NCBI GenBank assembly: GCA_964106915.2 | Contig: OZ066918.1 | Strand: one strand, 5' to 3' | From: Podarcis gaigeae | Taxonomy: Eukaryota | Length of the DNA stretch: 64,000 bases | In this document: one piece after another, positions 9,959 through 60,400 of the stretch | Numbering within the stretch: position 1 is the stretch's first letter | Layout of the letters: each line of letters begins with the position of its first letter | The notes under the pieces: generated by a model | What the model was told of the DNA's origin: nothing | Database searches by the model: none | What the model saw: the letters and a program-made list of their open reading frames with translations, nothing else | Program-made: the position numbers and the translations under genes

Positions 9959-10194
9959 CACAGATATTCCATTGGATGTGCTCACAGTTGTTTGTTCATA
10001 ATTCATTATTTCGTGCGTCAGATGAAGCAGAGCCAGTATTGTTAGGTTCTATAAACACAAGCGGGTCTATTCTAAGCAAAAGCAGGAAATGTCTAAAATA
10101 AATACTGGGTTCTATTCCTGCTTTATTTGTTTCTTGTATGAGTGGCGTTTTAAAGTGCAAGTTAGCAAAATGTTTTGTTTCCCATGTGGAATGA

Positions 10195-10600
10195 CTGTAT
10201 ATTTATATAATGCCATCCATCCTTGCACTGGGCACAAGAGGATACGTCCCTGCCCCAAGGAGCTTACAAACTAAAATCTTACATGGAAGAAACAACTGAG
10301 AAATGAAAGGGGGAGAGAAGGGAAGGCAGATAGGGAAGCAGTGTGCTTTGGTTTCAGTTTTGTGTACTTTGACTTGTTTAGAGGCTTAGTTGCGGTAGGG
10401 AATGGGAAAGTGGGATGTTGAGCAAGAGGCTTCACAGAAAACATAGGTTTAAGGAGGCATTTGAATAGAATAAGAGGTGGCATCACTGCGGTCATCTTAG
10501 TGGTAATTCCAAGCAGAGCGGCAGAAAGAGCAGTCTTTTGAGGGGGCAACAGACCTATGAAGGGTGCTAAAACTGGAGGAGCAAGGGCTGCATGCAGAGA
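10195..10600 (-). mobile_element. Old L2 LINE 3' fragment
   Basis: ccctgccccaaggagcttaca tail motif. Minus-strand FKCLLKPMF resembles the L2 ORF2 end FKxxLKTxLF. Boundaries approximate. Confidence 0.5.
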
Positions 10601-11919
10601 TAGAGCACACACATTATTGTTGCTTTTCCTGACATTTTCTCGATATTTGAGTCTGTTTTCCTGAGCAAACAAGAAGTTGTGTATTACTTGTCCCTGCTTT
10701 GTGCTGCATGGGTGCTTGTGGACTTATGGCATTGAACATGATATCTTGATTTTTTAAAGATGATCTTTGGAAGAAGTGGGCTCAAAATGTCCTTCATGCT
10801 TTTGATTTGATTTTTACATTTATGTCTGAAGGTGGCATATATGGCTCTGCCTCTGAGAGAAGAGCCTCCATGAAGTTCAGCTTCTCCAACCTGCTGTAAC
10901 CTGTTCTGGATTTTTTTTTGGACTGGAACTCTCATCATCCCCAGGCTACACCAGCTGCTGTAGGGGCACTAAGTTGCCCTGCTTGGTTATTTTCCCTGTG
11001 GCATCTTGTTGTAGGGAAAAATATATAAAGCTGAGCTGCTGATTGGTCTTTCCCCATGCAACAGTTGCAACAAACTTTGGACACATCTGCTGACTAAAAC
11101 CTTCCAGTGTCTCTCCTCTTTCAGCACTGCAATATTGCCAAATTTTTCCAATTAATGTTGCAGTCTTTCCAGATGCCATCATGAGAAGGAAGAAATAACT
11201 GATTTCATTTTTGGTTGCTTTTTTTTAAAAAAAAGCTTTTCTATATTTATTGATATTGTAGTTGCCCTCTTCTCACACACTTTTAAAAAAAAATCCTCTT
11301 TGAAGCAAAAAATGACATTGGGTGTTTGGGACGCTGATCTGCAAAAATAGCTATGCAATTATTGTGAGGATAGGATTATCCAAATTATTTGTTCTGCCTG
11401 GTAGTTTTGATTCTATCACTGCTGGACATTTGTTGCCCATTTAAACACAGAGATAGCAATGAGCTGGATACAAGCACAGACTGCCGTTTAAGGCTAGAGG
11501 AGGCAGGAAGAGCCCAAGCTGTGAGTAGAGGTGACCCAGTCCTACCTTACCAAGCAACAGTGTGCTCACATTTTGGTAAGCTATGTTTGCTTCCTTTTTT
11601 CCAGAGCAGTCTCCCTACTGACTCTCTGTTTTAGCACTTTGGCAAGCTTTTCAGAGCTCTCTTCCCCAAAGACCTTACAGGTGTCTACTGTAGGTAGTAT
11701 TAGCAGCTTTGTGGAACTATGTTCCCTCTGGTTCCTAGGGCTGGTGGTTCTGCTATGTGTGTTGCCACTGTAATGTGATACTGTACTGTGGTACCTGTAT
11801 GTGTAGCCTTTTCTGGCAAGTGCCCCACATTGGGCAGGTGCAGTTTATTATTTGGTTATCTGCTCAGGGCAATGGCTATTTGTCACAGGCAAGTAGGCAA
11901 ATTGCAAGTATAATTGACT

Positions 11920-11998
11920 GTGGTTGAGATTCCTGCATTGCGGGGGTTGGACTAGATGAATCTCGGGGTCCCCTCCAACTCTACAGTTCTGTGATTCT
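11920..11998 (+). mobile_element. CR1 LINE extreme 3' end
   Basis: gggttggactagatga..ggtcccctccaactctac..ttctgtgattct is a typical CR1 terminus. Confidence 0.8.
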
Positions 11999-12874
11999 GT
12001 AATGCGGGAGAAGTGTGTAACCTCTGTTCAAACAACTATTTTCTCAACACTCCTTGCCCCTCTACCTGCCTCCTGCCCTTTTGGGCTATAACATTCTTAT
12101 GTAAAAGAGGACCTGCTGTTAAAAGTTAACTGATCCTTGCCTTTGCCATAAAGGTGCCAGTTCTTGCAGCAGCTTGCTGCCTTGTTGAGGTGAATGGTGC
12201 TCCGACTCCACAGTGTTGATTTTTGACAGTGAAGAGCACGTTCCTTATTGCTTCTCTTTTTAAGCAACTTTGCATCCATAGTAGGTACATTAGCAGGTGC
12301 TCAAAATAGGCTGGGTCAGGGTAGATGGCAGAGGCAGGTGTCATGAGTCCTGTGGCATCAGCTGTGACAGGGTGGCAATGGCAGGATCTGTCAGAGGATG
12401 AGAACTCTGCGGTTGAGGTAGAGATGCTTTTGTAAGGGACAGGGGGGAGCTGGGGAGTTGCTAGCTGGACGAGTTCCTACTCCATCTCCTGAGTACAGAG
12501 TGCCCAAGATAGTGAAAGAGGCAGCTGGTAATTTGGCAGAGGCAGCTGAGTTGGAGACATAGGGAGAGTTTGAGGGTTGGGCTCAGGTCTTGTTGCCAAG
12601 GATGCACCAGTAGACCCAGCAGTTGCCGCCGCCACCACCACCAGGAGCTGTCGCTTGTGACTGTGTGGTCCTTCTCTTTAAAAGCAGAGCAGGAGAGGTG
12701 AGTCAAGTGTTGGGACAACATATTTGCTTATGCCTAGCCAGGTATCCCAGAACTCTGTTTATAAACCGTTAATAGCAGTGTTAGAAACTGAGATAGGAGC
12801 CAAATGGCTTCTAGGACCTGGGTTGTGGGCACCAAAACAGAATGTCTAGTCACCATTTGGGAGAGGTGGCAACA

Positions 12875-13330
12875 CTTTTTATTTATTATTTTGATGAGCA
12901 TGAACTAATACACAATTCACATAAGTTACACATTGTTAACATCACATTTTAAACATAAATTGTTAATACATGTTTAATTTGGTGTTTACATTAAAATTTT
13001 TGATACCATACTTCAGTCTTCAAAACACACTACTCTTTATTGTTAAACTCCTTAACATATTGCCTATCCTTAACATATACTTTGAGGCTTCAAAGCCCAT
13101 ACATTTCCATAATCCTTGAGTGTCAGCCAGGTGCAAAAAAATGGCACCCAGACTTTTTGAGGTGTTCGCAAATGGAGAATCTTTAGGTACAAAATGCGCC
13201 TGGTGCCCTGCTAATTTCAAAGTCTGGTTAGTAGATCTGATGATGAGGCCATGGTTTTATAAGTAAAGTTTTTGGGATTTCCCTATCTAAGAGTCTTTTA
13301 TCCAAGGGTGGGAACCAGGACATCCACACT
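12875..13330 (-). mobile_element. Degenerate L1/Tx1-like LINE 3' fragment
   Basis: T-rich tail on + strand. Minus-strand QKVWVPFF resembles the ORF2 C-terminal F.K.W..F motif. Boundaries approximate. Confidence 0.4.
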
Positions 13331-14099
13331 GCTTTAAACTCTCTGTGTTCCCTGTGTTAGGTGTTAAAACACCTGGGTGGTAGTTTTCAAGGTAGAGCTG
13401 GAGGAAGGAACGCCTTCATTTGACTTTGTTCTTTTAATAGCTCACCATAATAACATGCCATTTATAAACTTGAATTTCTGCACTAAAGATCCTATGTGGC
13501 TGCACAGTTTTGATAAGCTGCCACTGGATCTACAAAATACTTTGTGTATTTGTTTTTGTAGCAAGACCTGAATGATTAGCCCTAATTTAATTAAAAATTC
13601 TTTTGCAAAGGATCGTCATTCTGTTATTTGCTATTATTAACATTTTGCTGATTACTGCGAAACAGCATCCCTTGTGGATCTGAGATTATCCTAGGCGTTG
13701 CTGATGTGGTACCCTCCAGATATTGCTGGATTACAACTCCCATCAGCTCCACCCAACATGGCCAGTAGTCGGAGATTATCTTCTCATGTATCTGTAAATG
13801 GCTAAGGAATAGGAAGCAGAGAGGGAAGGATGCAGTAGGTAGAAGGATCAATATTGTGACCCATGATTTTTAAGTTGTTCGTAAATGTACTTGAGTTAGG
13901 GGGCAAGCAATGAGGTAGCCAAGTTTGCGTCTGATACCAAACTGGCAGAAGTTTTCATAATGCATTCCTGGTATAAGGCAAACTAAATATGCTTTGGTAC
14001 ATAAAAGGTATCTTTGGGTAAATGAACCCTTGCTGGAGATTTATGTGACCAGATCTACTACTAGTTTCCTCTACAAAGCTTCTAGTTCCCTCTGGGTAA

Positions 14100-14370
14100 A
14101 AGTTCTGACTACTATTACGGTAATGGTTTTCTGATGTGCCTGAAGTTGCTGGGCAGCCCACTCAACAGCCTTTTTCCATAAAGGAAAAAGCTGGAAGCAG
14201 AGCAGTCAATGAGCGGCATTGTGTCTTCATGTTTGTTTAGCAGGGTACAAATAGGTATAGCTTTGAGACCATCTGGCATTCTGCTTTCCCTGAGCAGTGC
14301 ATTGGTAATACCAGCTAATAAGGAACACAGCATTGCCCTGTTGGCTTTCATCTGTTAGGATGGGCATGGA
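14100..14370 (-). mobile_element. L2 ORF2 internal fragment (pre-RT region)
   Basis: Minus ORF ITNALLRESRMPDGLKAIPICTLLNK...SNFRHI resembles L2 IINxSLxxGxVPxxLKxAxVxPLLKK...NYRPIS. Confidence 0.5.
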
Positions 14371-15410
14371 TCCAAATTGTGTTTTGTAGCTCATGGGCTC
14401 ACTTCAGTGTATGCCCTCTGCATCTGTAAATGAGACTAATTGAAACTGATCCAAATAAAACAAGCAAGACTGAGTTTGACATCTCAAATGCAGTTTAGGT
14501 TTGGAGTCCCAGGCTGAACCAAATGCAAGTGACTTGTTTTTGCCAGATAGATGGGGAAACCCATCCCAACTGTCATAGATGGCTTAATCTCTGTAAGGTG
14601 AAATCCTGGATTCACAGGCCCTCTCATAATTCTGAGGTGGTTAGCAGGATGGCATTGCACTGGTAAGAGGCAAGGAAGATTTCAGTATAGCCTTCAAAAT
14701 GCCATTTTGCAAATAAAACCAAATAACAGATTTGGCTGAAATATCCCCTTTTGTTTCTGGGTTTCAAGGCGAGGAGATATGCAGTAATAAAAAAATGGAA
14801 AATGATTCCTGCATGCCACTGGCCACGTTTACACATAATGATAAGCCAAGGTTCTTGGTTTATCTTTAACAAACGATACTTTGCACAAGCAGAGTGCCTG
14901 TGCACTGTGTACAGAGTTGTGTACTTTTTGCTCATTTCTTTGAATGAGCAGGTAAACAAACCAGGAAGGGCATAACATCACATTATATCTGAATCTGGAA
15001 TTGTGGTTTGTTTTCCCCTAGCAATACACAGTTTATAAACCAATGACAAACCTTGCTTTAAGGCTAGCTAGTGATTTTTGGCTTGTTAGAGAGAGATAAA
15101 CAATTATCATAGGTTCAGATAATGGTATCCTTTTGTGGTTTTTACCATCTCTTGTGAAGGGATCATCAAAGTGGGAGTTATCAGGTTGTGTGCACTGTGT
15201 GGTTTGTTAAGCCAAGGCTGTTGACTTTTGGTACCCACAAACATTGCCAATGTGTTGGAGTCCAATTTGTTGTCTGATAGCTTGGTCAGGCCATTGGAAA
15301 CTTAACCATAAGGATCAATGTATTTATCCTCTTGAGAGTTCTAGAATCCAGTTGGCTTCATACCTCTTGACCTGGCTGTATGACTGGTAGGGTTTGGCCA
15401 GAATCCAATA

Positions 15411-15636
15411 CAGTGGTACCTCGGGTTACATACGCTTCAGGTTACGGATTCTGCTAACCCAGAAATATTATCTTGGGTTAAGAACTTTGCTTCAGGATGA
15501 GAACAGAAATCGTGCTCTGGCAGCGCGACGGCAGCAGGAGGCCCCATTAGCTAAAGTGGTGTTTCAGGTTAAGAACAGTTTCAGGTTAAGAACGGACCTC
15601 CGGAACAAATTAATTACTTAACCCAAGGTACCACTG
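15411..15636. mobile_element. Tc1/mariner (Tigger-like) MITE
   Basis: TIR CAGTGGTACCT...AGGTACCACTG flanked by TA on both sides. Near-identical to 29722-29963. Confidence 0.92.
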
Positions 15637-16136
15637 TAATGGATAACTGACCATTCATTTGCTGCTCCCCCTGTGCATTAACAAAAGCTATAAATTGTTG
15701 GTATAATATTGCTTGGTAACTTTCATTTCATTAGTTTGTTTATTAAATTATATACCACGTTCATCCGAGGATTGTGGGGCGGTTTACAATATAAATATAC
15801 TTAACAATCCTCTGAAGCTCTCTCCCAGCAGGAGACTAGTTGCCTCTTTATCATTTCAACTCTTCAGTTTGATCAAGATTGTTTTAGTTGTTGTTTTTAG
15901 AAAAGTATTACTTTGTTGAGTTTTCATAATGGGTGGCACCAAGAACAGTAAGCAGACGTCCCCTCTCTCTATTTGCAGATAACAAAATAATTGCAATTAC
16001 CCTCCCAGTCTCTGGTTGTTCACTTCTTGGGGTGGGAGGGGGTTCACCTAAAGTTTGTTTAGAGAGAAAGAGGGATCTGATAAAACAATACTGTTTTCTG
16101 TTTGAGGCTATCCCGTTTAAATATTAAGGTCTAGAG

Positions 16137-16268
16137 TAGCATAGAGCAACATGGTGCCCTCCAGATGTTGTTGAACTAACTCTCATCAGCCCCAGCTAGT
16201 GTTGCCAAGAGTCAGGAATGTTGAGAGTCCTACAACATCTGGAGAGAACACCATGTTGGATACCCCTG
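16137..16268. mobile_element. Degenerate hAT palindromic MITE
   Basis: Inverted arms caacatggtg..ctccagatgttg / caacatctggag..caccatgttg. Flanks gtctagag/gtctgcag. Confidence 0.65.
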
Positions 16269-18512
16269 GTCTGCAGTGGGAAGAATGGAGGGACAAAGAT
16301 TCAAATATGATAGTTCGAGGAAGCATAGAGTGAACAGCGTGTTTTGAGTTTAAGAAAAAGGACATTTTAGCTTTAATCCTGAAACAAATGTAATGTGTTA
16401 GCCAGAAGTCACAAGCACTCTCCTGCTCCCACCCTAACAGAGCCCTAACTGGGACAGATAAGATAGGGCAGGAATAGCCCAGGAACACTCAGGACTGAGG
16501 TTGTTGCTGTTATTTATTAGACTTGCCAGTTGGTTGTTACCCAGACGTCTCCAAGTGACTTACAACACATTTAAAACATACAGTACACCATAAAAACAGA
16601 ACAAAGCAACTCCCAAGATAGCTGCAGGAGACTTTGGCATTCAAGTTGAACTTAAATGACTATTTCAAACAGTACCAATACCTTCCATGGTGTGTACCAT
16701 GTGTGAGACAGGTAGTGGAAGCAATGCTTTGTGGATGGTTGAACTCAGTTGCCTGCTTTTCAATTAAGATTTGTGGGGTGGCACCCTTTGAGCTGTACCA
16801 CGCTGGAGCTATTTCACATGTCATTCTTGTTTCCTATCAGAGCAGAGAGGACCAGTTGTTCCCCCATGGGACCCAGAGGAGCTTCACATATTACCTGAGT
16901 AGTATACATCACACTAAAGGGGGACAGAGGCCAAGAGGGGCCTGCGCTTTCTGAGACAAGTAGCTTGCATTCCCCCTCTGTCAATTCCTGGCACCTTGAG
17001 CATATTTGAAAGAAAGGCACTTTTTGCATGCAAAATGTAGCAGAGTCATAAACTACGCATTTTAAAAAGAAGGCTGCAAACCTTTTTCTTACGGCGCTGC
17101 CGCTGCTGATTTGTGCAGAATGGAACTGTATTGCAGCCACTCGTAGCTATAGTGAGAATGTCGCTTCAGATGAAGTCTAGACTGCAGCATGAGCATGTGG
17201 CCAATTTGAATGAAGTTTGGGTCAAAGAGGATAACTTTATTCAATCTACCCTTTCGTGCTTTGATGCCCCTGGTTCAAATGCACTTGTAACCATTGCTTG
17301 AATAGCTTGCTTTGGACTTAATCCACCTCTTGTGAGCCAGCCCGCTCCATTTTTGGATGCAGAGAAGTAGGAGATAAGCTTAGCTTGTTGCAAAACATAA
17401 CATGTTTTTTTCTTGGCTTAATTTCCCTTCCATCTTTTTTAGGGTACTCTGATGTGCTGGGACTTTCTGCATGTGAACCTGCAGATTAGCATCTGTTTCA
17501 GTTTGATATAGAAGCTGAGGTGCAGGGGAAGTGGGTGATTGACAAGGAGCAGACTTGAATAGTTTTATACGCAACACTGTTTTGCAAACTGGCTGCATTT
17601 GACTTTACAGCTGTTTTAACACATAGCAAGACTTTCCGCCTGCCTGCCTGCCTCTGTACTGGAGGCAGCTTTTCTTTGTTCATTCTGCCTCCCTGTACTT
17701 GTATCTGGCCTGCAAGGAGTTAACTCCAGCTCAGTGAGTGCTGGGCTCCTGGCTGCTGTTACGCTACAGTGGAGGACCAGCCCAGACACTGGCTGCTGGT
17801 GTTGCTGGGGGGAACGGAATCAGTGACGGCAGTAGTCGCAGCATCAGCCGGCTGTTTGTGCACATCATCAGCCAGCGGCTGAGGGGAAATAAAACTGAAA
17901 GCCCTTGGATGCAACAGTGTTGCTTGAAAGAAGCACCAGCACCCATGGACCAGGTTGGCATCCTGGCAGCAGGCAAGCTGAACTGGGTTCATACCCTTTT
18001 GACCTTCTCCTGCTTGGAGTCGGATGGAGTGATGAAGTAGCAGGGAGCAATGCAGAGTCGGGCTTGGAGCCTAAAACAGTGAGTTGGGGTTGGGAAGAGG
18101 TTGGCTGGGGGGGGGGGGCATAAAGGGTATTCTTGGAGCTCGTTGCTTTTCAGGCACAATCTTCAGGGAAGCTGATTCTTTGTTTCTACAGCAACAGCGC
18201 AGGCTGGAGCAAATGTTGAAACTGCTGCCTTACTTCGGCTTTTGGGCTCAGTTTCATCCTCTTCCTGGATCAAAGCTAGAGATTATATACAAAAATGAAT
18301 AAAAATTGGGGGTGGGGGATTTGTAGTACAGAGCTTCTGTCTTTTCAGGAAACACTTTTAAGGAATGCGAATCTTCAGGAATATCACCACTGAAAGCTTT
18401 ACGGCACTTGGAAATATAGCGTTTTTGGTCCTAGACAATTGTCCCCAGCAGTAAGTCTGTCTTCTGTGTTCCTGCTGCATAAATATCCTTCAAGTGTTTA
18501 TGTGTTGCAACT

Positions 18513-18698
18513 TAGGTAGCTGCCCTATACCTGATTGGACCATTGGTTCATCTAACAGCATTGTTCTGTACACTAACAGGCAGTGGCTTTCCAGGGTTTC
18601 AGGCAGTTACTTCTCCCAGCCTTATCTGGTGATGCTGGAGGTTTAATGTGGGATCTTTTGCATGCAAAGTCTGTGCTCTGCCACTGAGCTTTGGCCTT
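18513..18698 (-). mobile_element. tRNA-derived squamate SINE (Squam3-like)
   Basis: Minus strand reads ggccaaagctcagtggcagagcacagactttgcatgcaaaagatcccacattaaacctccagcatc (tRNA A/B-box-like head), ending ...atagggcagctacct. Confidence 0.7.
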
Positions 18699-20053
18699 TG
18701 CCCTTTGTGTACCACATTTCCATACTATCATTCTTATCACCCTGATAATAACCCATTCATAGAAAGCACCCCCAGCTAAGCACTATGTCACCTGCACAGC
18801 AGCAAACCAGTGTCCCCCAAATTTTAACTACTTTACTTCTTCAATTTTTCTTTCTGTACACCTAAAGAGCCTGGGACAAAAAGGAATTGATTGATTTTTG
18901 CCACTGGTGTGCTTATTTGTCCTAGCTAATGTTAACATATTGGGATAAAAGAATGTTCTGTGGGGTTTTTCAAACAAAAACTGATTTGGGGAAACAGACC
19001 TACCCAGATATTTCACCCTTGGTTAGGGGCATTTTACTACTCCAAGATAAATTGGAATGTAGGTTGTGGTATGAAAACCATTTATGTTAATTTTTTTAAT
19101 GGGTGAAGGTAAGTCTCTGTGTGACTCAGTATACTGGTGTTTTACCTCTTCACGTTTTATATAGCAGAAGTCAACCCCCTTTCCTTCCCTTTGCAAATAA
19201 TGTAGTTCCATACCTATGACAATATGCAGTGTGGTCCCAAAGTTGATTTTGTCTTTGTTGCTAGTCTGAAATCCAGACTTCTCTTTCCATCTCCAGAAAA
19301 AAGCACCAAAGCTTCAGAATGTACAGTATTAGCTGACCTGTCCAATTAAAAGGACTCTGGTTGATGATCTTTGTTTCCAGTAAAATTTCTACCCCATTAC
19401 ATGTGGCTGATGAAGAATTTACAGTAGTGTAATAAAACTTGAAAATGGCAAAATGCAGATTATTGTTCATTATAGACAACTGTGGATGAGTCTGGACTCC
19501 AATATTCATAATAAGATGTTTGGTAAAGGCAATATTCTGATGTTTGAATAGCTCTCAAATGTAGAATTGATAAGGTGGAATATTCCTCAACATACCTTGT
19601 AGTCCACCTCTTCCCTTTTCCTGATAATATGTACACACTGTTTCCTCAGTCACAGACCACTGAACCAACCCCAAGACACACATTCAGTTAGGCAAAAGTT
19701 AGGCTTCAGCATGCAAGTGTTACTTACAGTTACTGTATACTCTCTCTCTATATTGGGAAAAAACAAAACTTTATATAACCTGCTCCTAAACTTTTTTTCT
19801 CACATACATAATTTTTATTTCAGTGGAAATCACTGAATTGGTACCTCCACCCTTGAAAAACAATCTTAATCTCCTTTATTTGGAAGCAAGCACCTTCCTT
19901 TGGGCTGCATTCTCACACTACCGCTGCTACAGTGTTGTATTGCTGATGTTTAAATACTTTTGCCCATAAAAAGGTTAATTAGGGTAGTTCCGATGCATCT
20001 GTATATTCAGGAATAACAGCATTGGCTAAAACTATTTTTGTGTTGTTTTTCAG

Positions 20054-22661
20054 GGAGACTTAGAAAACAAACCAGTCAATGGCTGCAGACCAGAGCTCAT
20101 GGACTGTGTTGCCCACGGCCATGGCGAAAAACCCAAGGTGAAACCAAGCCATTTGCTGCCTTGGGAAAATGTACAGGCAGATGAAAAGGGAAGTATGACT
20201 GGCTTAGAAACGGAGAAGTGGGCACAGAATGAGAAGCCATCGCTTAGCGTCCATGTGAACGGTGACCTCTGTAGAGCTAGAGCAAGGAATGAGAACTCGA
20301 AACATTTTGAAAAGGATCCAAAAGCTGTTCATTCTTCCAACGTGTTAGATGACCCCAAAAAGTTGCTTGCACAAACTGTTAGAAATGGCATTAAAAGCAT
20401 TCCTTATTCACCAGCAGAATGTGACTTGTTGCTGAAAAAAACAGGTGCTGATCCGGCAAACAGCTGCCCAGAAAGCAACTTGGATGCCTCTTTGGGTTGC
20501 GCTGCTCAACTGAACAATAACAGCACTTTGACAACTGGAACATGTGGTGCTCTTCCAGAAAAGAAGGATCGCATTCTAGCGCAGCAGACAGAAAACTCTA
20601 ATGCCATTCAGGAATCTGAGAACTCACTTTTACAAACTATTTCACTTTTAGATCTTCAGGACAAGCCATCTTGCACTCCCGTGCATGACACAGATGGCTG
20701 CCTTGATGATGGTGCTTCAAATGGTGCTCCAAGCAAAGATTTGCAACCTGAAGATTTGTCACTTCAGTCAACTTTTTTATCTTTGATTAAAAACCGAAAT
20801 TTAACTGTAGAACAGGTTGTAGCTATTGAGGCATTGACACGCTTGTCGGAAGTCCCTCCAGGAGCTCCCTTACCAGCTAAACCAGAAAGAGTTCAGTGCA
20901 TAGAAGAGCAAAGTTCACATTCACTTAACAATTACAAAAAGGATAATTCATGTTTCTTGACATCATCTGCATTGAAAGTAATCAAAGGAAGTTGTCCACA
21001 GAAGGACCAGCAGCTCTTTCCTCATGCTCCTTCGCAGAGAAGAACCCTTCCTAAAAGTCCCTTGACGTCATCTGCATTGATAGCAATCAAAGGGGCTTGT
21101 CCACAGAAAGACCAGCAGCTCTTTTCTCATGGTGCTTCACAGAGAAGAATCTTTCCTAAGAGTTTGCTTTACAATGGTCAAGGTGCTATTTCTGAATTCC
21201 CCAGTAAAACCACTGGTCCATCTAGCTTATTGCGTAGGCTACATTTCTCCCCACGAGATACCAAGTCTTTATCTGCGTTAGTGTCTGGTGGAACTTCAGG
21301 TCATACTACCAAGAAACACCCTCTTTATCATAAAGCTGCCATTGGGCCATGCTCCAAAATCTCAAGTGTTGTCAAACAGCGGAGGAGCAGAGTAGACATG
21401 CTTGGAAAGTGGGAGGGGAAGGCTGTCCATGGCTCAAATTCAAAAAGTAATTCTGTATTTAGGGGAAATATTCATAGCCAGGATGAGGAAGAGGTAGCCA
21501 CCCAGTTAACTCAACTTGCAGCAATAATTGAATCAAGCAAAGCAAGCCCAGACCAGAAGACATCGCTTCTCAGTCGAATACCACCCGATATGCAACCAAA
21601 ACATAAACAGGACCAGTGCCTATTGCAGAAGAAACAATCTGTATTTGTAAGGAACAATTATAGTCCATTGTTAGTCAAGCAAAGGCAACCAACACGGAAA
21701 AATGAAAAACCAGTACCGAGGGCAAAAAGATTAAAAAAGAAGCCTCAAGTAATGCCTGACCAACAAAATCAGCTACAACAAGATTGCCATCTTAGTGAAT
21801 TACAGGACATACCGAAAAAGCCTTCTAAACTACGCAAGGTTGGTCGTAACGCGTCACAGGATTCAAAACTAACTGCTTTGGGGAAAAGATCTTCTAAAGC
21901 CAAAGTACAGAAGGCATGGAATCGGAATACTTTGTCATCACAACAAAAAGCAGCTGCATTATTTCTTCCCAAAACTCAAATAATATACCACAGGCCTTTG
22001 CCTGCTTCAACACAAGACAAAGTGAAAGACAAGTTGTTTGGCTTTGAAATGGTGCCTGAGCACATAAAAACTATGGGCTCCAATGAGGCACGGGGCACCA
22101 ATCCTCCAGGTGCTGCCCCAGATGCTCTGCACCATAGTGGCCTACTCTCCAATAGTCTTCTGACTGTCCCTCACTTCGAAGCAAAATCCTGTTTGAACCA
22201 AGGAAGTGAAAATGTACACATGTTTACAGAAAAAGACAAGAATTCTCAGGTACAGCAAACAATGAACATGGCTCAGATGCATCCTTTGCCTCAGATCTTT
22301 GGTCAAAGAGCAGATGAAATGTGCAAGGAAAACCAAGCAAAACTTGAGTGCGGTGCTATGGAACAACAAATGGGCCAGAAATTGCAAACCATGTCCATTA
22401 ACTGTAGCTTAGCCTCCCCAGGGGAAACCTTGCAGGCTCTCAGGAAAGCAGAGTGTGCAAGTGAAGTTACAGTTCCAACATCAAGAAGCTTGGAGACTGA
22501 GAACACACAGAGAACAGGGATCTTAGGGTGTTCTCCAACAAAGAATACACTCAGTAGTTTTCTTGAATCGCCTATGAAGTTCTTGGACACCCCTACAAAG
22601 AACCTAATCGATACACCTACAAAGAAAGGACAGACTGATTTTCCAAGCTGTGATTGTGTTG
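20054..22661 (+). CDS. TET1: TET1 large exon 4 (2608 nt): disordered region with Sin3-interaction helix, up to the start of the Cys-rich domain
   Basis: Acceptor tttttcag|GGA. Starts [17 protein letters not shown]; Met at 20099 corresponds to the short-isoform start. Contains [17 protein letters not shown]. Ends FPSCDCV G|gtaagt (phase 1). Confidence 0.95.
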
Positions 22662-23136
22662 GTAAGTGTAATTTGCTTCATTTTGCATGGAGTTCTGAAA
22701 GTTTTCTCACTGAGGATTCCTTTAGAATTTTTATCTTGCAAATGTTGCCTCTTGCCTGCTCTGATGAAGTGAGTCTCCAAGTCTCGACCACATAAGTGAA
22801 AAGATGACTCTATATCACTCCATATACTAATCAAGTAACTGCTTGATTACCTGAATTTACCATCTGGCTGTGACTTCCAACAGTAGTGGAAGAATTTCTA
22901 GTTACCTAAAGAGTTGATGTTATCAGTTGAAAATACTTCTTCAGCCCTGCACTTCAGGGAATTGCTGGCTTCCTGTTTCTCTGCAACAAACGGAGGAAAA
23001 TTGTTTTGTTGGTTTGTTGACAATTAGGGAATAACAACCTATATAAATAATACAGGGGAGATATCTTTATCACTGCTCCTCCTTGGTTGTCTCATTGAAT
23101 TCCAATGTGTCCTTGGTAAAAGCAGTATATTATTTA

Positions 23137-35742: not shown

Positions 35743-35951
35743 GTGATACGAAGAAGTAGCGATGAAGAAAAACTGCTCTGCTTGGTTCGACAGCGTGCAG
35801 GACATCACTGCCAAAATGCCGTCATTGTGATACTTATTTTGGCTTGGGAGGGGATTCCTCATCTTCTGGCTGACACTCTATACAAGGAACTGACCCAGAG
35901 CCTCAGAAAATATGGCTGTCCAACTAGCCGAAGATGTGCACTAAACGAAGA
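35743..35951 (+). CDS. TET1: TET1 exon 7 (209 nt; [23 protein letters not shown]...RRCALNED)
   Basis: tttttcag|GTG...GA|gtgagt. Zn-ligand motif GHHC. Confidence 0.97.
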
Positions 35952-36235
35952 GTGAGTGCACTCCAGAACACTGATATTTTGATGCATGAAAGTTTTAATT
36001 CTCCCACATAATTTACTTCTGTGACTCGTAATTAGTCTTTTTAAGATTTCAGATTATAGCCCTAGTACATAAAACTTGAAAAAGTGTCATTTTGTAGTTG
36101 AGTAGGATGTAGCCAACGTTTAATTGCCAATTTGAGTATAGTGTGGGAGGACCAAAATGAGCTTTCTGCGCCTCCTGTTTTCATCTCTGGCAAAAAAAGA
36201 AATTACATGAAGACGGGTGTTTCCCTTCATTTTAA

Positions 36236-36373
36236 AACAAATAGGTATCTGAAGAAGTGTGCATGCACACGAAAGCTCATACCAAGAACTGACTTAGTTG
36301 GTCTTTAAGGTGCTACTGGAAGGAATTTTTTTTGTTTTGACTATGGCAGACCAACACGGCTACCTATCTGTAA
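36236..36373 (+). mobile_element. Penelope-like element pLTR fragment
   Basis: ctgaagaagtgtgcatgcacacgaaagctcatacc...ttggtctttaaggtgctactgga...cagaccaacacggctacc. 12-bp TSD ccttcattttaa (36224-36235 and 36374-36385). Confidence 0.8.
36244..36283 (+). ncRNA. Minimal type-I hammerhead ribozyme motif (Penelope-associated)
   Basis: Stem I GGUAU (36244-48)/AUACC (36279-83). Core CUGAAGA (36249-55) plus one extra A. Stem II GUGUG/CACAC with CAUG loop. GAAA (36271-74), GC, then UC with predicted cleavage after 36278. Confidence 0.78.
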
Positions 36374-36705
36374 CCTTCATTTTAATTTACTTGAGCCACA
36401 TCTTGTTATGCTGCTTCTGATGCTGTGAAGGAATCACAACCAAACCTATCAAGCATGATATCTTTCTCTAAATAGCTTAAATTATAAACTTAGTATATCC
36501 CATTAGAAGGTCAGTTGACTAGGAAATCTCTTATACACAGTAATAGAAAAGTAACATTTATACCCAAATCGGTCATTATCAAAAACCGCTGATGAACTAT
36601 GACATGTGTGTTTTTCCATTGTTCTGTTCAGAGATGTTTGGGGTATGCATTTATAGAAGCTTGCTGCACTGCTGGCTGATTGCCACTTGTTTAAATCTTC
36701 CACAG

Positions 36706-36856
36706 TCGTACCTGCGCCTGTCAAGGCCTTGATCCAGAGACATGTGGAGCATCCTTCTCATTTGGCTGTTCATGGAGTATGTATTATAATGGCTGTAAGT
36801 TTGCCAGAAGCAAAGCCCCCAGGAAATTTAGACTTCTCACTGATGATCACAAACAA
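36706..36856 (+). CDS. TET1: TET1 exon 8 (151 nt; [50 protein letters not shown])
   Basis: ccacag|T...CAA|gtaagt. Invariant TET motif [13 protein letters not shown]. Confidence 0.97.
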
Positions 36857-59219: not shown

Positions 59220-60400
59220 CTTGGGGTGCATTCTGAGCTTCAGGTAGGCAGCGAGCGTCAGGAAGCGTTTCTGTTTGCCTCATGGCAGCGCAGAATCTGA
59301 GGCGCTTCTTTAGGCCCGGACCTTTCAACCTCGACATTCCCTCAAGGTGCCTACTCTACAGTAAGATGGCGCTGCTGTTATGACCCGCCAAGCAAAGTGG
59401 CGACGGAATACGACGTAATGCAAATCGAATGACGGCTTTCCTCATAGGATTCTTCGCTTCTCGATCGTTAGGGGAGGGGGGCTTCCCTTGACGCATGCGC
59501 GCCGTTACTTCCCTTCCTTGTTTTGGAGACGGCGACCCCATCTTCCCGGAGCACGTGTACGAGGGAGGGGCGGGGAAATCTCACTTCGAGACGTCACCGA
59601 GGTGCGCGGCGCCCGAGTGAATCGCCCCCTCCAACCCGTCCTCGCTCGCGCTCCACTTCGACGCATGCGCCGTGCCTCGATTATCCGTGTGCGCGGGGTG
59701 TCGGAGGGGGTGGGGAATGTGCCGGAGGAGTTTGAAATGGCCCCTGTGAGTCCTCATTCGGCCCGCGCCAGGTAAAGGGTCGTCGGGGTTGAGGCGCGTC
59801 AAAGGCGCCGAGGCCGGGTTGGCCGTTTCAGAAGTGACGAGCCTTGAGGTTTCCGACAGCGGCCCTTGGGCGGGCTGGGCAATGCGAGAGAGGGAGGCTC
59901 TTCTCCCGGGCGGCAGGCAGGCCTCTGCCCCTCATTGTTGTTGCAGGAGGAGGAGGAGGCGCGTCTCCCGCTCTGCTTTCTCCTCGGGTCCCTGTCCCTC
60001 CACCTGAGGAGGAAGAGCGAGCGAGCGAGCTGGCTGGCAGTTTCGCCCTCAAAGGCCTCTTGTCTGTGTCTCCGCCCGCCCTCCATCCACCTCTTCTCGC
60101 CCCCCACCCCGCGTGCCTCGCATGCATGGGGAGCGCGAGAGCCACCCAATAGTTACTTCTTTGTTTCACTCCGTGAATTTCCTCCACTCGCATTCTCTCG
60201 TTCCTTATTTGTAGGCCTTGTTTGTGTCGGTCCCCCCCCCCCCAACGTATCCCATTAAATACAATATATCTTCCATCCTGCCGGTGAGGTTCACGCTGGA
60301 CAATTGGACGTATGATTGCTAAGAAGCGAGTCGGACTGAGCTCAGTTAAGCTGGCTGTCAGGTGCTCGCGACCTCAGTCTGCCTACGTGCAGGTTTCTAG
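59220..60400 (+). promoter_or_regulatory. CCAR1: CCAR1 CpG-island promoter
   Basis: Dense CpG. YY1 AAGATGGCG 59363-71, octamer ATGCAAAT 59418-25, NRF1-like CGCATGCGC at 59492 and 59662, E-box 59552-57, GC box 59567-75, TTTGAA 59731-36. Confidence 0.88.
59700..59771 (+). other. CCAR1: CCAR1 non-coding exon 1 (5' end approximate)
   Basis: Donor CAG|gtaaag at 59771/59772 inside the CpG island. The gtttgaaatggc segment resembles mammalian CCAR1 exon 1 (recalled). Confidence 0.6.

What the first reader, a model, noticed from the sequence alone, without database searches (positions are those of the whole stretch)
36224..36385. Intact minimal hammerhead ribozyme in sense orientation inside TET1 intron 7
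Seen: a 138-bp insertion with a 12-bp TSD contains every hammerhead core element. These are stem I GGUAU/AUACC, CUGAAGA plus one extra A, stem II closed by G-C (GUGUG-CAUG-CACAC), GAAA, and a UC cleavage site after 36278. Stem III is reduced to the palindrome AGCU. Known: Penelope-like retroelements carry such minimal type-I hammerheads, which are weak as monomers and are thought to cleave as dimers through the palindromic stem III. It lies on the transcribed strand in a 754-nt intron between two catalytic-domain exons, ~330 nt from the donor and ~430 nt from the acceptor. Inference: pairing in trans with other Penelope transcripts could cut TET1 pre-mRNA. A DNA demethylase would then be sensitive to retroelement RNA levels, forming a potential feedback loop. 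Neutral passenger status is the null hypothesis.
Basis: partly seen in the sequence, partly recalled or inferred. Interest (0 to 1): 0.78.

Follow-up and report, generated by a model that had tools for sequence, protein, structure and literature searches.

The report
Young Penelope hammerhead insert in TET1
A 138-base fragment of a very abundant lizard jumping gene (a Penelope-like retroelement), carrying that family's usual minimal hammerhead ribozyme motif, landed recently in an intron of TET1; the motif is real, but it is an ordinary passenger and very unlikely to cut the TET1 transcript.

Summary
At 36236-36373, a 138-bp insert with exact 12-bp target-site duplications carries a complete minimal type-I hammerhead on the TET1 sense strand. 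It lies in a 754-nt intron between two catalytic-domain exons.

A descriptor scan finds this motif once in 64 kb and in 0 of 300 shuffles. Its architecture is the one published for Penelope-like-element (PLE) hammerheads, reptiles included. Rfam models do not detect it.

Contigs from public runs show two things:
- The insert belongs to a family with 10,000-19,000 contig pieces per run, about 10^4-10^5 times the flank depth.
- The orthologous site is precisely empty in two close relatives (flanks about 1% and 2.4% diverged) and filled in the source species and one other.

So the copy is young. It matches the family's commonest base at all but one reported variable position, which explains why the motif is intact without selection.

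There is no second copy in the window. The AGCU helix III duplex is worth only about -3.9 kcal/mol. Published PLE hammerheads do not cleave as monomers and cleave poorly even as dimers.

The TET1 feedback idea is unsupported. This is a known class and a neutral passenger. The scan has already reported sister copies elsewhere in this genome (MDN1, GRIA2) with the same verdict.

The parts
36224..36235 (+). Left target-site duplication CCTTCATTTTAA (AT-rich, contains ATT)
   Evidence: A single copy is present at the empty site of organism E (joint 36223>36374, skips 150, 12 letters shared).
36236..36373 (+). 138-bp retroelement insert, a 5'-truncated PLE-type tail or mini-element, in sense to TET1
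   Evidence: Summed contig depth is about 10^6 here against 12-84 in the flanks. The site is empty in organisms E and F.
36236..36243 (+). 5' junction nucleotides (AACAAATA) that do not match the family
   Evidence: table 7. Other copies stop matching this copy upstream of 36244/36245. Their own proximal consensus there is ...TTTCAGT.
36244..36248 (+). Hammerhead helix I, 5' strand GGUAU
36249..36255 (+). Core box C3-A9, CUGAAGA
36256..36256 (+). Unpaired extra A between A9 and G10.1, a hallmark of PLE hammerheads
   Evidence: The feature is described in PMC4209133.
36257..36270 (+). Helix II hairpin GUGUG-CAUG-CACAC with the G10.1-C11.1 closing pair. The whole 14 nt is a perfect palindrome.
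   Evidence: Pairing probability is 0.92 in the insert alone.
36271..36274 (+). Core box G12-A15.1, GAAA. C36270-G36271 is a CpG that has decayed in 10-20% of family depth.
   Evidence: table 3.
36274..36277 (+). Palindrome AGCU, a helix III stub that can pair only with a second copy
   Evidence: The duplex energy is -3.9 kcal/mol.
36278..36283 (+). C17 (predicted cut 36278/36279) followed by the helix I 3' strand AUACC
36297..36357 (+). 3' hairpin (GUUGGUCU...AGACCAAC) ending in the AC-rich CCAACAC. It is the likely counterpart of the PLE reverse-transcription initiation stem-loop.
   Evidence: fold; z = -0.72, not significant alone. The analogy is to the PAc element.
36374..36385 (+). Right target-site duplication
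35952..36705 (+). Host intron, 754 nt (GTGAGT...CAG), 604 nt without the insert
   Evidence: The flanking exons match the TET catalytic domain.

Best explanation
This is a recent, lineage-specific insertion of a short copy of a highly amplified Penelope-like-element (PLE) family of a lizard. The element's endonuclease and reverse transcriptase made it by target-primed reverse transcription at an AT-rich site. The copy keeps the element's 3' part: the minimal type-I hammerhead of the pseudo-LTR/ORF junction plus about 95 nt, ending just after an AC-rich stem-loop. The hammerhead looks intact because the copy is young, not because it is used. In TET1 pre-mRNA it is spliced out with the intron as a neutral passenger.

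Shown: the motif, the target-site duplications, the copy number, and the empty orthologous sites.

Inferred: the PLE transposition mechanism (by analogy with Anolis PAc) and the absence of cleavage.
For: Motif and class:
- The descriptor hit is unique in the window and absent from 300 shuffles.
[quoted passage not shown] That paper reports such motifs in reptiles.
- The Anolis Poseidon consensus shows the same layout: CUGAGGA, then U, a 6-bp helix II, GAAA, ACGU, C. It also has CAACAC at the mapped RT start, 85-92 nt past the cut. Here CCAACAC lies 72-79 nt past the cut and the insert ends at +95.
- The target contains ATT in AT-rich DNA, as PAc prefers.

Copy number and age:
- 10,000-19,000 contig pieces per run match the insert. 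Summed depth is about 10^6 against 12-84 for the flanks.
- Single contigs from organisms E and F join 36223/36220 to 36374, which is an empty site with one TSD copy.
- In organisms A and D the contigs break 6 and 22 nt inside the insert.
- Flank divergence is 1.0% for E and 2.4% for F.
- This copy differs from the commonest family base at only one reported position (36291).
- 10-20% of family depth has lost the core CpG, including G12>A. Inserted copies therefore decay neutrally.

Activity:
- There is no partner copy in 64 kb.
- The helix III duplex is -3.9 kcal/mol.
- Helix I probability is 0.11 or less.
Against: - No RNA data exist for a species that carries the insert, so cleavage in vivo is untested.
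- No full-length element with an RT/GIY-YIG ORF beside this family's hammerhead could be examined. PLE membership therefore rests on motif architecture, insertion anatomy and the literature.
- Thermodynamic folds ignore co-transcriptional folding, which would favour the local hammerhead helices.
- A preprint reports depletion of related retrozymes from Xenopus introns. That leaves room for some cost of intronic copies.
Confidence: 0.9

Rival explanations
1. The intronic hammerhead pairs in trans, through AGCU, with hammerheads in other Penelope transcripts. It then cuts TET1 pre-mRNA and couples the level of a DNA demethylase to retroelement RNA abundance.
For: - The core is sequence-complete and on the sense strand.
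- The family is extremely abundant, so many partner RNAs could exist.
- Dimeric cleavage is the accepted mode for such motifs.
- An intronic ribozyme can tune its host mRNA, as shown for Cpeb3.
Against: - The 4-bp intermolecular helix is about -3.9 kcal/mol. That is a millimolar-range Kd by nearest-neighbour estimate.
- The most stable predicted dimer uses the helix II palindrome instead, which does not build helix III.
- Single motifs show no cleavage, and dimers are weak and mostly need non-physiological Mg.
- The Anolis PLE hammerhead needs its own protein and leaves no RNA-seq ends at the cut.
- Only 427 nt separate the cut site from the acceptor, and slow ribozymes do not affect splicing.
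- The insert is missing in close relatives and is one of more than 10^4 copies, so nothing is specific to TET1.
Confidence: 0.02
2. The insert matters to TET1 through ordinary transposon side effects rather than catalysis. One example is a cryptic 3' splice site (T-rich tract plus CAG at 36325-36349) followed by a GTAAC donor-like site at 36370. That would give a 20-nt frameshifting pseudo-exon.
For: Direct reading of the sequence: TTTTTTTTGTTTTGACTATGGCAG|ACC...ATCT|GTAACC.
Against: Splice-site strength was not scored and no RNA evidence exists. A 20-nt exon is poorly defined. The insert is fixed or common in two species without any sign of harm.
Confidence: 0.04
3. The motif is a chance match to the hammerhead consensus in ordinary intron sequence.
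For: No Rfam hammerhead family matches, even at E<=10.
Against: - 0 of 300 shuffles give a hit.
- It lies inside a TSD-flanked insert of a massively repeated family whose copies share the core.
- It shows four features that are not part of the core boxes but are typical of PLE hammerheads.
Confidence: 0.01

Closest known systems
Minimal hammerhead ribozymes of Penelope-like elements (Cervera & De la Pena 2014, PMC4209133; Lunse, Weinberg & Breaker 2017, cited in PMC6765202)
   Same: - Type-I topology with a 4-5 bp open helix I.
- CUGANGA and GAAA boxes.
- An unpaired nucleotide between A9 and G10.1, and a G10.1-C11.1 pair.
- Helix III reduced to a palindrome, so only dimers can be active.
- Thousands of dispersed single copies, most of them on truncated elements.
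- Reported in reptiles.
   Different: Helix II is 5 bp with a CAUG loop, shorter than the 6-8 bp quoted for flukes and flies. This lizard family's sequence is not, to my knowledge, specifically described. No adjoining RT/EN ORF was seen here.
Poseidon_Ac (PAc) of Anolis carolinensis (PMC11167929)
   Same: - Same hammerhead layout, including the extra nucleotide and a 4-nt palindrome (ACGU there, AGCU here).
- An AC-rich CAACAC stem-loop downstream of the cut, where reverse transcription starts.
- An AT-rich target containing ATT.
- 5' truncation of copies.
   Different: The primary sequence is different (compared by eye only). In PAc the ORF starts at A9-U-G, whereas here that triplet is AAG and the only ATG (loop II) meets a stop after 9 codons. 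This copy ends 95 nt after the cut; PAc starts reverse transcription at 85-92 nt, with an optional tail.
Non-LTR retrozymes (Cervera & de la Pena 2020, PMC7229834; bioRxiv 10.64898/2026.07.22.740005)
   Same: Short non-autonomous PLE-derived units with type-I hammerheads. The average reptile consensus is 176 bp, and dispersed monomers are common.
   Different: Retrozymes are defined by tandem repeats that can yield circular RNA. This locus holds a single monomer with target-site duplications, so no circle can form.
Conserved intronic self-cleaving ribozymes (Cpeb3 HDV-like ribozyme, PMC10919898; mammalian intronic hammerheads HH9/HH10, from my own knowledge)
   Same: A self-cleaving motif on the sense strand of an intron of a protein-coding gene.
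   Different: Those are complete monomeric ribozymes with minute-scale kinetics and are conserved across orders. This one lacks helix III, is species-group specific, and is one of more than 10^4 repeats.

Membership tests
PLE-associated minimal hammerhead (min-HHR) | Core boxes CUGANGA and GAAA, and a UH cleavage site | tested here: met
   CUGAAGA 36249-55, GAAA 36271-74, U16.1-C17 36277-78.
PLE-associated minimal hammerhead (min-HHR) | [quoted passage not shown] | tested here: met
   A36256. The criterion is from PMC4209133.
PLE-associated minimal hammerhead (min-HHR) | G10.1-C11.1 pair closing helix II | tested here: met
   G36257-C36270.
PLE-associated minimal hammerhead (min-HHR) | Helix III reduced to a palindromic 15.x-16.x stub or loop | tested here: met
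   AGCU 36274-77 is its own reverse complement.
PLE-associated minimal hammerhead (min-HHR) | Short (4-5 bp) open helix I | tested here: met
   GGUAU/AUACC, 5 bp. Only 4 of the pairs are clearly family-derived.
PLE-associated minimal hammerhead (min-HHR) | Large consensus family of copies in the genome | tested here: met
   10,000-19,000 contig pieces per run and about 10^6 summed depth.
PLE-associated minimal hammerhead (min-HHR) | Lies in the pseudo-LTR of an element encoding RT plus GIY-YIG endonuclease | not testable with these tools
   There is no full-length copy in the window. The metagenome scan gave no reptile copies.
PLE-associated minimal hammerhead (min-HHR) | Self-cleavage as a dimer | not testable with these tools
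   This needs an in vitro assay. Only thermodynamic estimates were made.
Rfam hammerhead families (Hammerhead_1, Hammerhead_3, HH9, HH10, Hammerhead_II) | Covariance-model score at or above the gathering threshold | tested here: not met
   No hammerhead match at gathering score or at E<=10 over 36150-36450. This is expected, since those models include a real helix III (my own knowledge).
PLE insertion (target-primed, internal RT initiation, as in PAc) | AT-rich target with ATT, target-site duplication, 5' truncation, and a 3' end at or after an AC-rich stem-loop about 85-120 nt past the hammerhead cut | tested here: met
   TSD CCTTCATTTTAA. Family homology starts at 36244/45. CCAACAC lies at 36351-57 and the insert ends at +95. 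The hairpin itself is not more stable than shuffles.
Non-LTR retrozyme | Tandem head-to-tail repeats, each with a hammerhead | tested here: not met
   This locus has a single unit and the window has no second copy. Head-to-tail joints do exist elsewhere in the family (table 5c).
TET1 (host gene) | Paralogue-specific N-terminal large exon plus Tet_JBP catalytic exons | tested here: met
   named TET1 hits, 41-46% identity in birds and 63-69% in squamates. Tet_JBP. TET2 structure homologue at 8e-29.

The most novel reading that the evidence does not exclude
Sense-oriented intronic copies that keep both the hammerhead and the 3' protein-binding hairpin might be cleaved when the family's own RT/EN protein is expressed. 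That protein is predicted to be dimeric and activates the hammerhead in Anolis. Bursts of PLE activity would then impose a genome-wide pre-mRNA cleavage cost on thousands of genes, TET1 among them. This would be a generic cost, not a dedicated TET1 feedback loop.
Probability: 0.03. Interest if true: 0.6.

Novelty: already known. Interest (0 to 1): 0.1.

Why it matters
It matters little by itself. It is one more copy of a documented class of retroelement ribozyme motif.

Its use is as a clean natural experiment. Closely related lizard species carry filled and empty alleles of the same TET1 intron. If anyone wished to test whether minimal PLE hammerheads ever cut host pre-mRNAs, comparing exon 7-8 splicing and RNA ends between these species would answer it.

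It also warns the scan that this genome holds tens of thousands of such 'intact hammerheads'. 121 notes have already been filed on them.

Tried and rejected
- Rfam at gathering score over the whole window, and at E<=10 around the site: no hammerhead match. The three weak hits (UPD-PKc, tobamovirus IRES, a Tetrahymena snoRNA) are noise.
- blastn of the insert against the window: no second copy.
- My first pattern search had the spacer one base too long and missed the site. The Python descriptor replaced it.
- Metagenome scan for the core pattern: 10 loci, mostly chance matches in bacterial-looking contigs. There were no reptile copies, so no full-length element and no covariation test. L007 holds an unrelated min-HHR-like motif.
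- Lunse et al. 2017 (PMC5785218) is not held. It is cited only through the review PMC6765202.
- The search of earlier findings by sequence: blank.
- The 3' hairpin is not more stable than shuffles (z = -0.72), and neither is the whole insert (z = -1.46).
- RNA evidence: no run on record as RNA holds the intron. The 'RNA?' runs belong to organism F, which lacks the insert. Expression and ends therefore could not be tested.
- Paralogue naming:
  - The PDB holds only TET2, so cannot separate TET1, TET2 and TET3.
  - The last-exon search returned bird fragments named 'TET3'.
  - The large-exon search settled it as TET1.
- The exons were searched one by one by reference.

Full report
**What is there**

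Reading the sequence and the repeat finder confirm an exact 12-bp direct repeat, CCTTCATTTTAA, at 36224-36235 and 36374-36385. It encloses 138 bp (36236-36373). The + strand of the insert carries a complete minimal type-I hammerhead:
- Helix I: GGUAU (36244-48) pairs with AUACC (36279-83).
- Core box CUGAAGA: 36249-55.
- One unpaired A: 36256.
- Helix II: GUGUG-CAUG-CACAC (36257-70), closed by G10.1-C11.1.
- GAAA: 36271-74.
- The palindrome AGCU (36274-77) stands in place of helix III.
- C17 is 36278, so the predicted scissile bond is 36278/36279.

I wrote a descriptor requiring these elements: helix I and helix II of at least 4 bp, an optional extra base, and a palindromic helix III stub. It hits once on the two strands of the 64-kb window and in none of 300 dinucleotide-preserving shuffles. 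Rfam does not see it, either at gathering score or at E<=10. That is expected for a motif without a real helix III.

**Host gene**

- The exon ending at 35951 (...[21 protein letters not shown]...RRCALNE) and the exon starting at 36706 ([31 protein letters not shown]) are TET catalytic-domain exons.
- The last exon has a Tet_JBP hit.
- The PDB holds only TET2, so it cannot decide the paralogue.
- The paralogue-specific 884-aa exon (20099-22750) matches proteins named TET1 in about 40 bird species and in mammals. Its closest relatives are squamates at 63-69% identity: Naja, Sphaerodactylus and Phrynocephalus.
- The gene is therefore TET1 of a squamate.
- The intron is 35952-36705, 754 nt. The cut site would be 327 nt from the donor and 427 nt from the acceptor.
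- Exons were searched one at a time by reference.
- 'Intron 7' follows human numbering, which I could not verify.

**What the insert is**

Contigs of four public DNA runs from four closely related organisms were laid on the intron.
- The flanks have single-copy depth (12-84). The insert collects 10,000-19,000 contig pieces per run, with summed depth near 10^6. It therefore belongs to a very large repeat family, present in all four organisms.
- In organism E one 6.9-kb contig joins 36223 directly to 36374. It skips 150 bases, with 12 letters shared by both sides.
- In organism F one 6.3-kb contig joins 36220 to 36374.
- These are empty sites with a single copy of the duplicated 12-mer.
- In organism A (probably the source species) and organism D, the flank contigs run 6 nt and 22 nt into the insert and stop there. 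This is what an assembly graph does at a high-copy repeat, so those sites are filled.
- Flank divergence from the window is 0% for A, about 0.8% for D, 1.0% for E and 2.4% for F.
- The insertion is therefore recent and lineage-specific, and TET1 works without it in sister species.

Among positions where at least 10% of family depth differs, this copy carries the minority base only at 36291. It is thus about 1% from the family's commonest sequence. The single CpG in the core (C11.1-G12) has decayed to TG or CA in 10-20% of family depth. G12>A is inactivating by established hammerhead biochemistry. Inserted copies therefore decay as neutral DNA, and this one is intact because it is young.

Homology to other copies begins at 36244/36245. 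The first 8-9 nt of the insert are junction filler, and the copy is 5'-truncated at the very edge of the hammerhead.

**Comparison with the literature**

Cervera and De la Pena (PMC4209133) defined min-HHRs of Penelope-like elements by features beyond the core boxes:
- a conserved G10.1-C11.1 pair;
- palindromic 15.2-16.2 positions;
- a 4-5 bp helix I with no defined loop 1;
- thousands of dispersed single copies on truncated elements.

They note such motifs in reptiles. They found no cleavage by a single motif and only weak cleavage by dimers, mostly at non-physiological Mg.

The biochemical study of Anolis Poseidon (PMC11167929) adds the following:
- Insertion occurs at AT-rich sites containing ATT.
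- Copies are 5'-truncated.
- Reverse transcription starts internally, in an AC-rich stem-loop 85-92 nt past the hammerhead cut, with an optional tail.
- The hammerhead cleaves only when the element's protein is added.
- No RNA-seq reads begin or end at the cut site.

Its consensus shows the same layout as here (CUGAGGA-U-helix II-GAAA-ACGU-C), and CAACAC at the RT start. In the window CCAACAC lies 72-79 nt past the cut and the insert ends at +95. The sequences are otherwise different, so this is another PLE family or a non-autonomous derivative (bioRxiv 10.64898/2026.07.22.740005). I could not examine a full-length element. The link to an RT/GIY-YIG ORF therefore rests on anatomy and the literature.

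**Can it cut TET1 pre-mRNA?**

- There is no second copy in the window, so no cis dimer can form.
- The AGCU:AGCU duplex is worth about -3.9 kcal/mol, a millimolar-range Kd by nearest-neighbour estimate.
- The most stable predicted homodimer uses the 14-nt palindrome of helix II, which does not supply helix III.
- In partition-function folds, helix I has a probability of 0 in the insert alone, 0.11 in a 350-nt context and 0.01 in the whole intron. Competing pairings include a perfect 10-nt complement of the core at 36157-66.
- These are equilibrium predictions and ignore co-transcriptional folding.
- Synthetic-ribozyme work summarised in PMC10919898 (Fong et al. 2009) shows that only fast ribozymes impair splicing. 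PLE hammerheads are slow even as dimers, and only 427 nt separate the site from the acceptor.

**Verdict**

The Penelope hammerhead identification is supported.

The scan has filed 121 notes on hammerhead/Penelope motifs in this genome. Two follow-ups on other copies, in MDN1 and GRIA2 introns, reached the same conclusion. Those notes are not independent evidence, but they agree with the copy number measured here.

Noticed in passing
window 36257-36270: Helix II plus its CAUG loop is a perfect 14-nt palindrome. Cofolding predicts a strand-swapped homodimer (-40.2 against 2 x -11.6 kcal/mol) through helix II rather than through the AGCU helix III stub. Whether the whole family shares this is unknown.
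   Followed up: partly
window 36157-36166 vs 36271-36280: Host intron sequence upstream of the insert (ATGAGCTTTC) is a perfect 10-nt complement of the hammerhead's GAAA-AGCU-C17-A1.1 segment. About 0.3 such pairs are expected by chance in this region, so it is probably coincidence. It would compete with the active fold (probability 0.33 in a 350-nt context).
   Followed up: partly
window 36325-36375: The insert brings a T-rich tract followed by CAG (36347-36349) and, 20 nt later, a GTAAC donor-like site (36370). This is a possible cryptic frameshifting micro-exon. It was not scored and no RNA data exist.
   Followed up: no
proteins P0007 and P0010 vs P0132-P0175: Bird protein fragments that match the TET1 last exon over 98% of its length are named 'TET3 dioxygenase' in their source records. 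Fragments from the same kind of bird records that match the TET1-specific large exon are named TET1. The TET3 labels on the C-terminal fragments look like misnaming.
   Followed up: partly
window 59800-60300 and 1-2000: Two GC-rich islands (GC 0.48-0.49 against about 0.40 elsewhere). The downstream one lies about 14 kb past the TET1 stop and may be the promoter of the next gene. An earlier scan note places CCAR1 just beyond the window. The upstream one coincides with first-reader notes on an internal TET1 promoter.
   Followed up: no
tables 5 and 5c (family copies elsewhere in the genomes): Many contigs join the family sequence to itself head-to-tail (for example 36374>36245 or 36332>36245, with a few letters between) or on opposite strands (for example 36247<>36326). 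Tandem and inverted (palindromic) arrangements of this element are therefore common elsewhere, as other first-reader notes in this genome describe.
   Followed up: no
L007:31-61 (-): A 1.35-kb AT-rich metagenome contig carries a min-HHR-like motif with the same layout (GCAC-CUGAGGA-A-GUGGGC...GCCCAC-GAAAGCUC-GUGC). It is presumably from a eukaryote's PLE in that sample.
   Followed up: no
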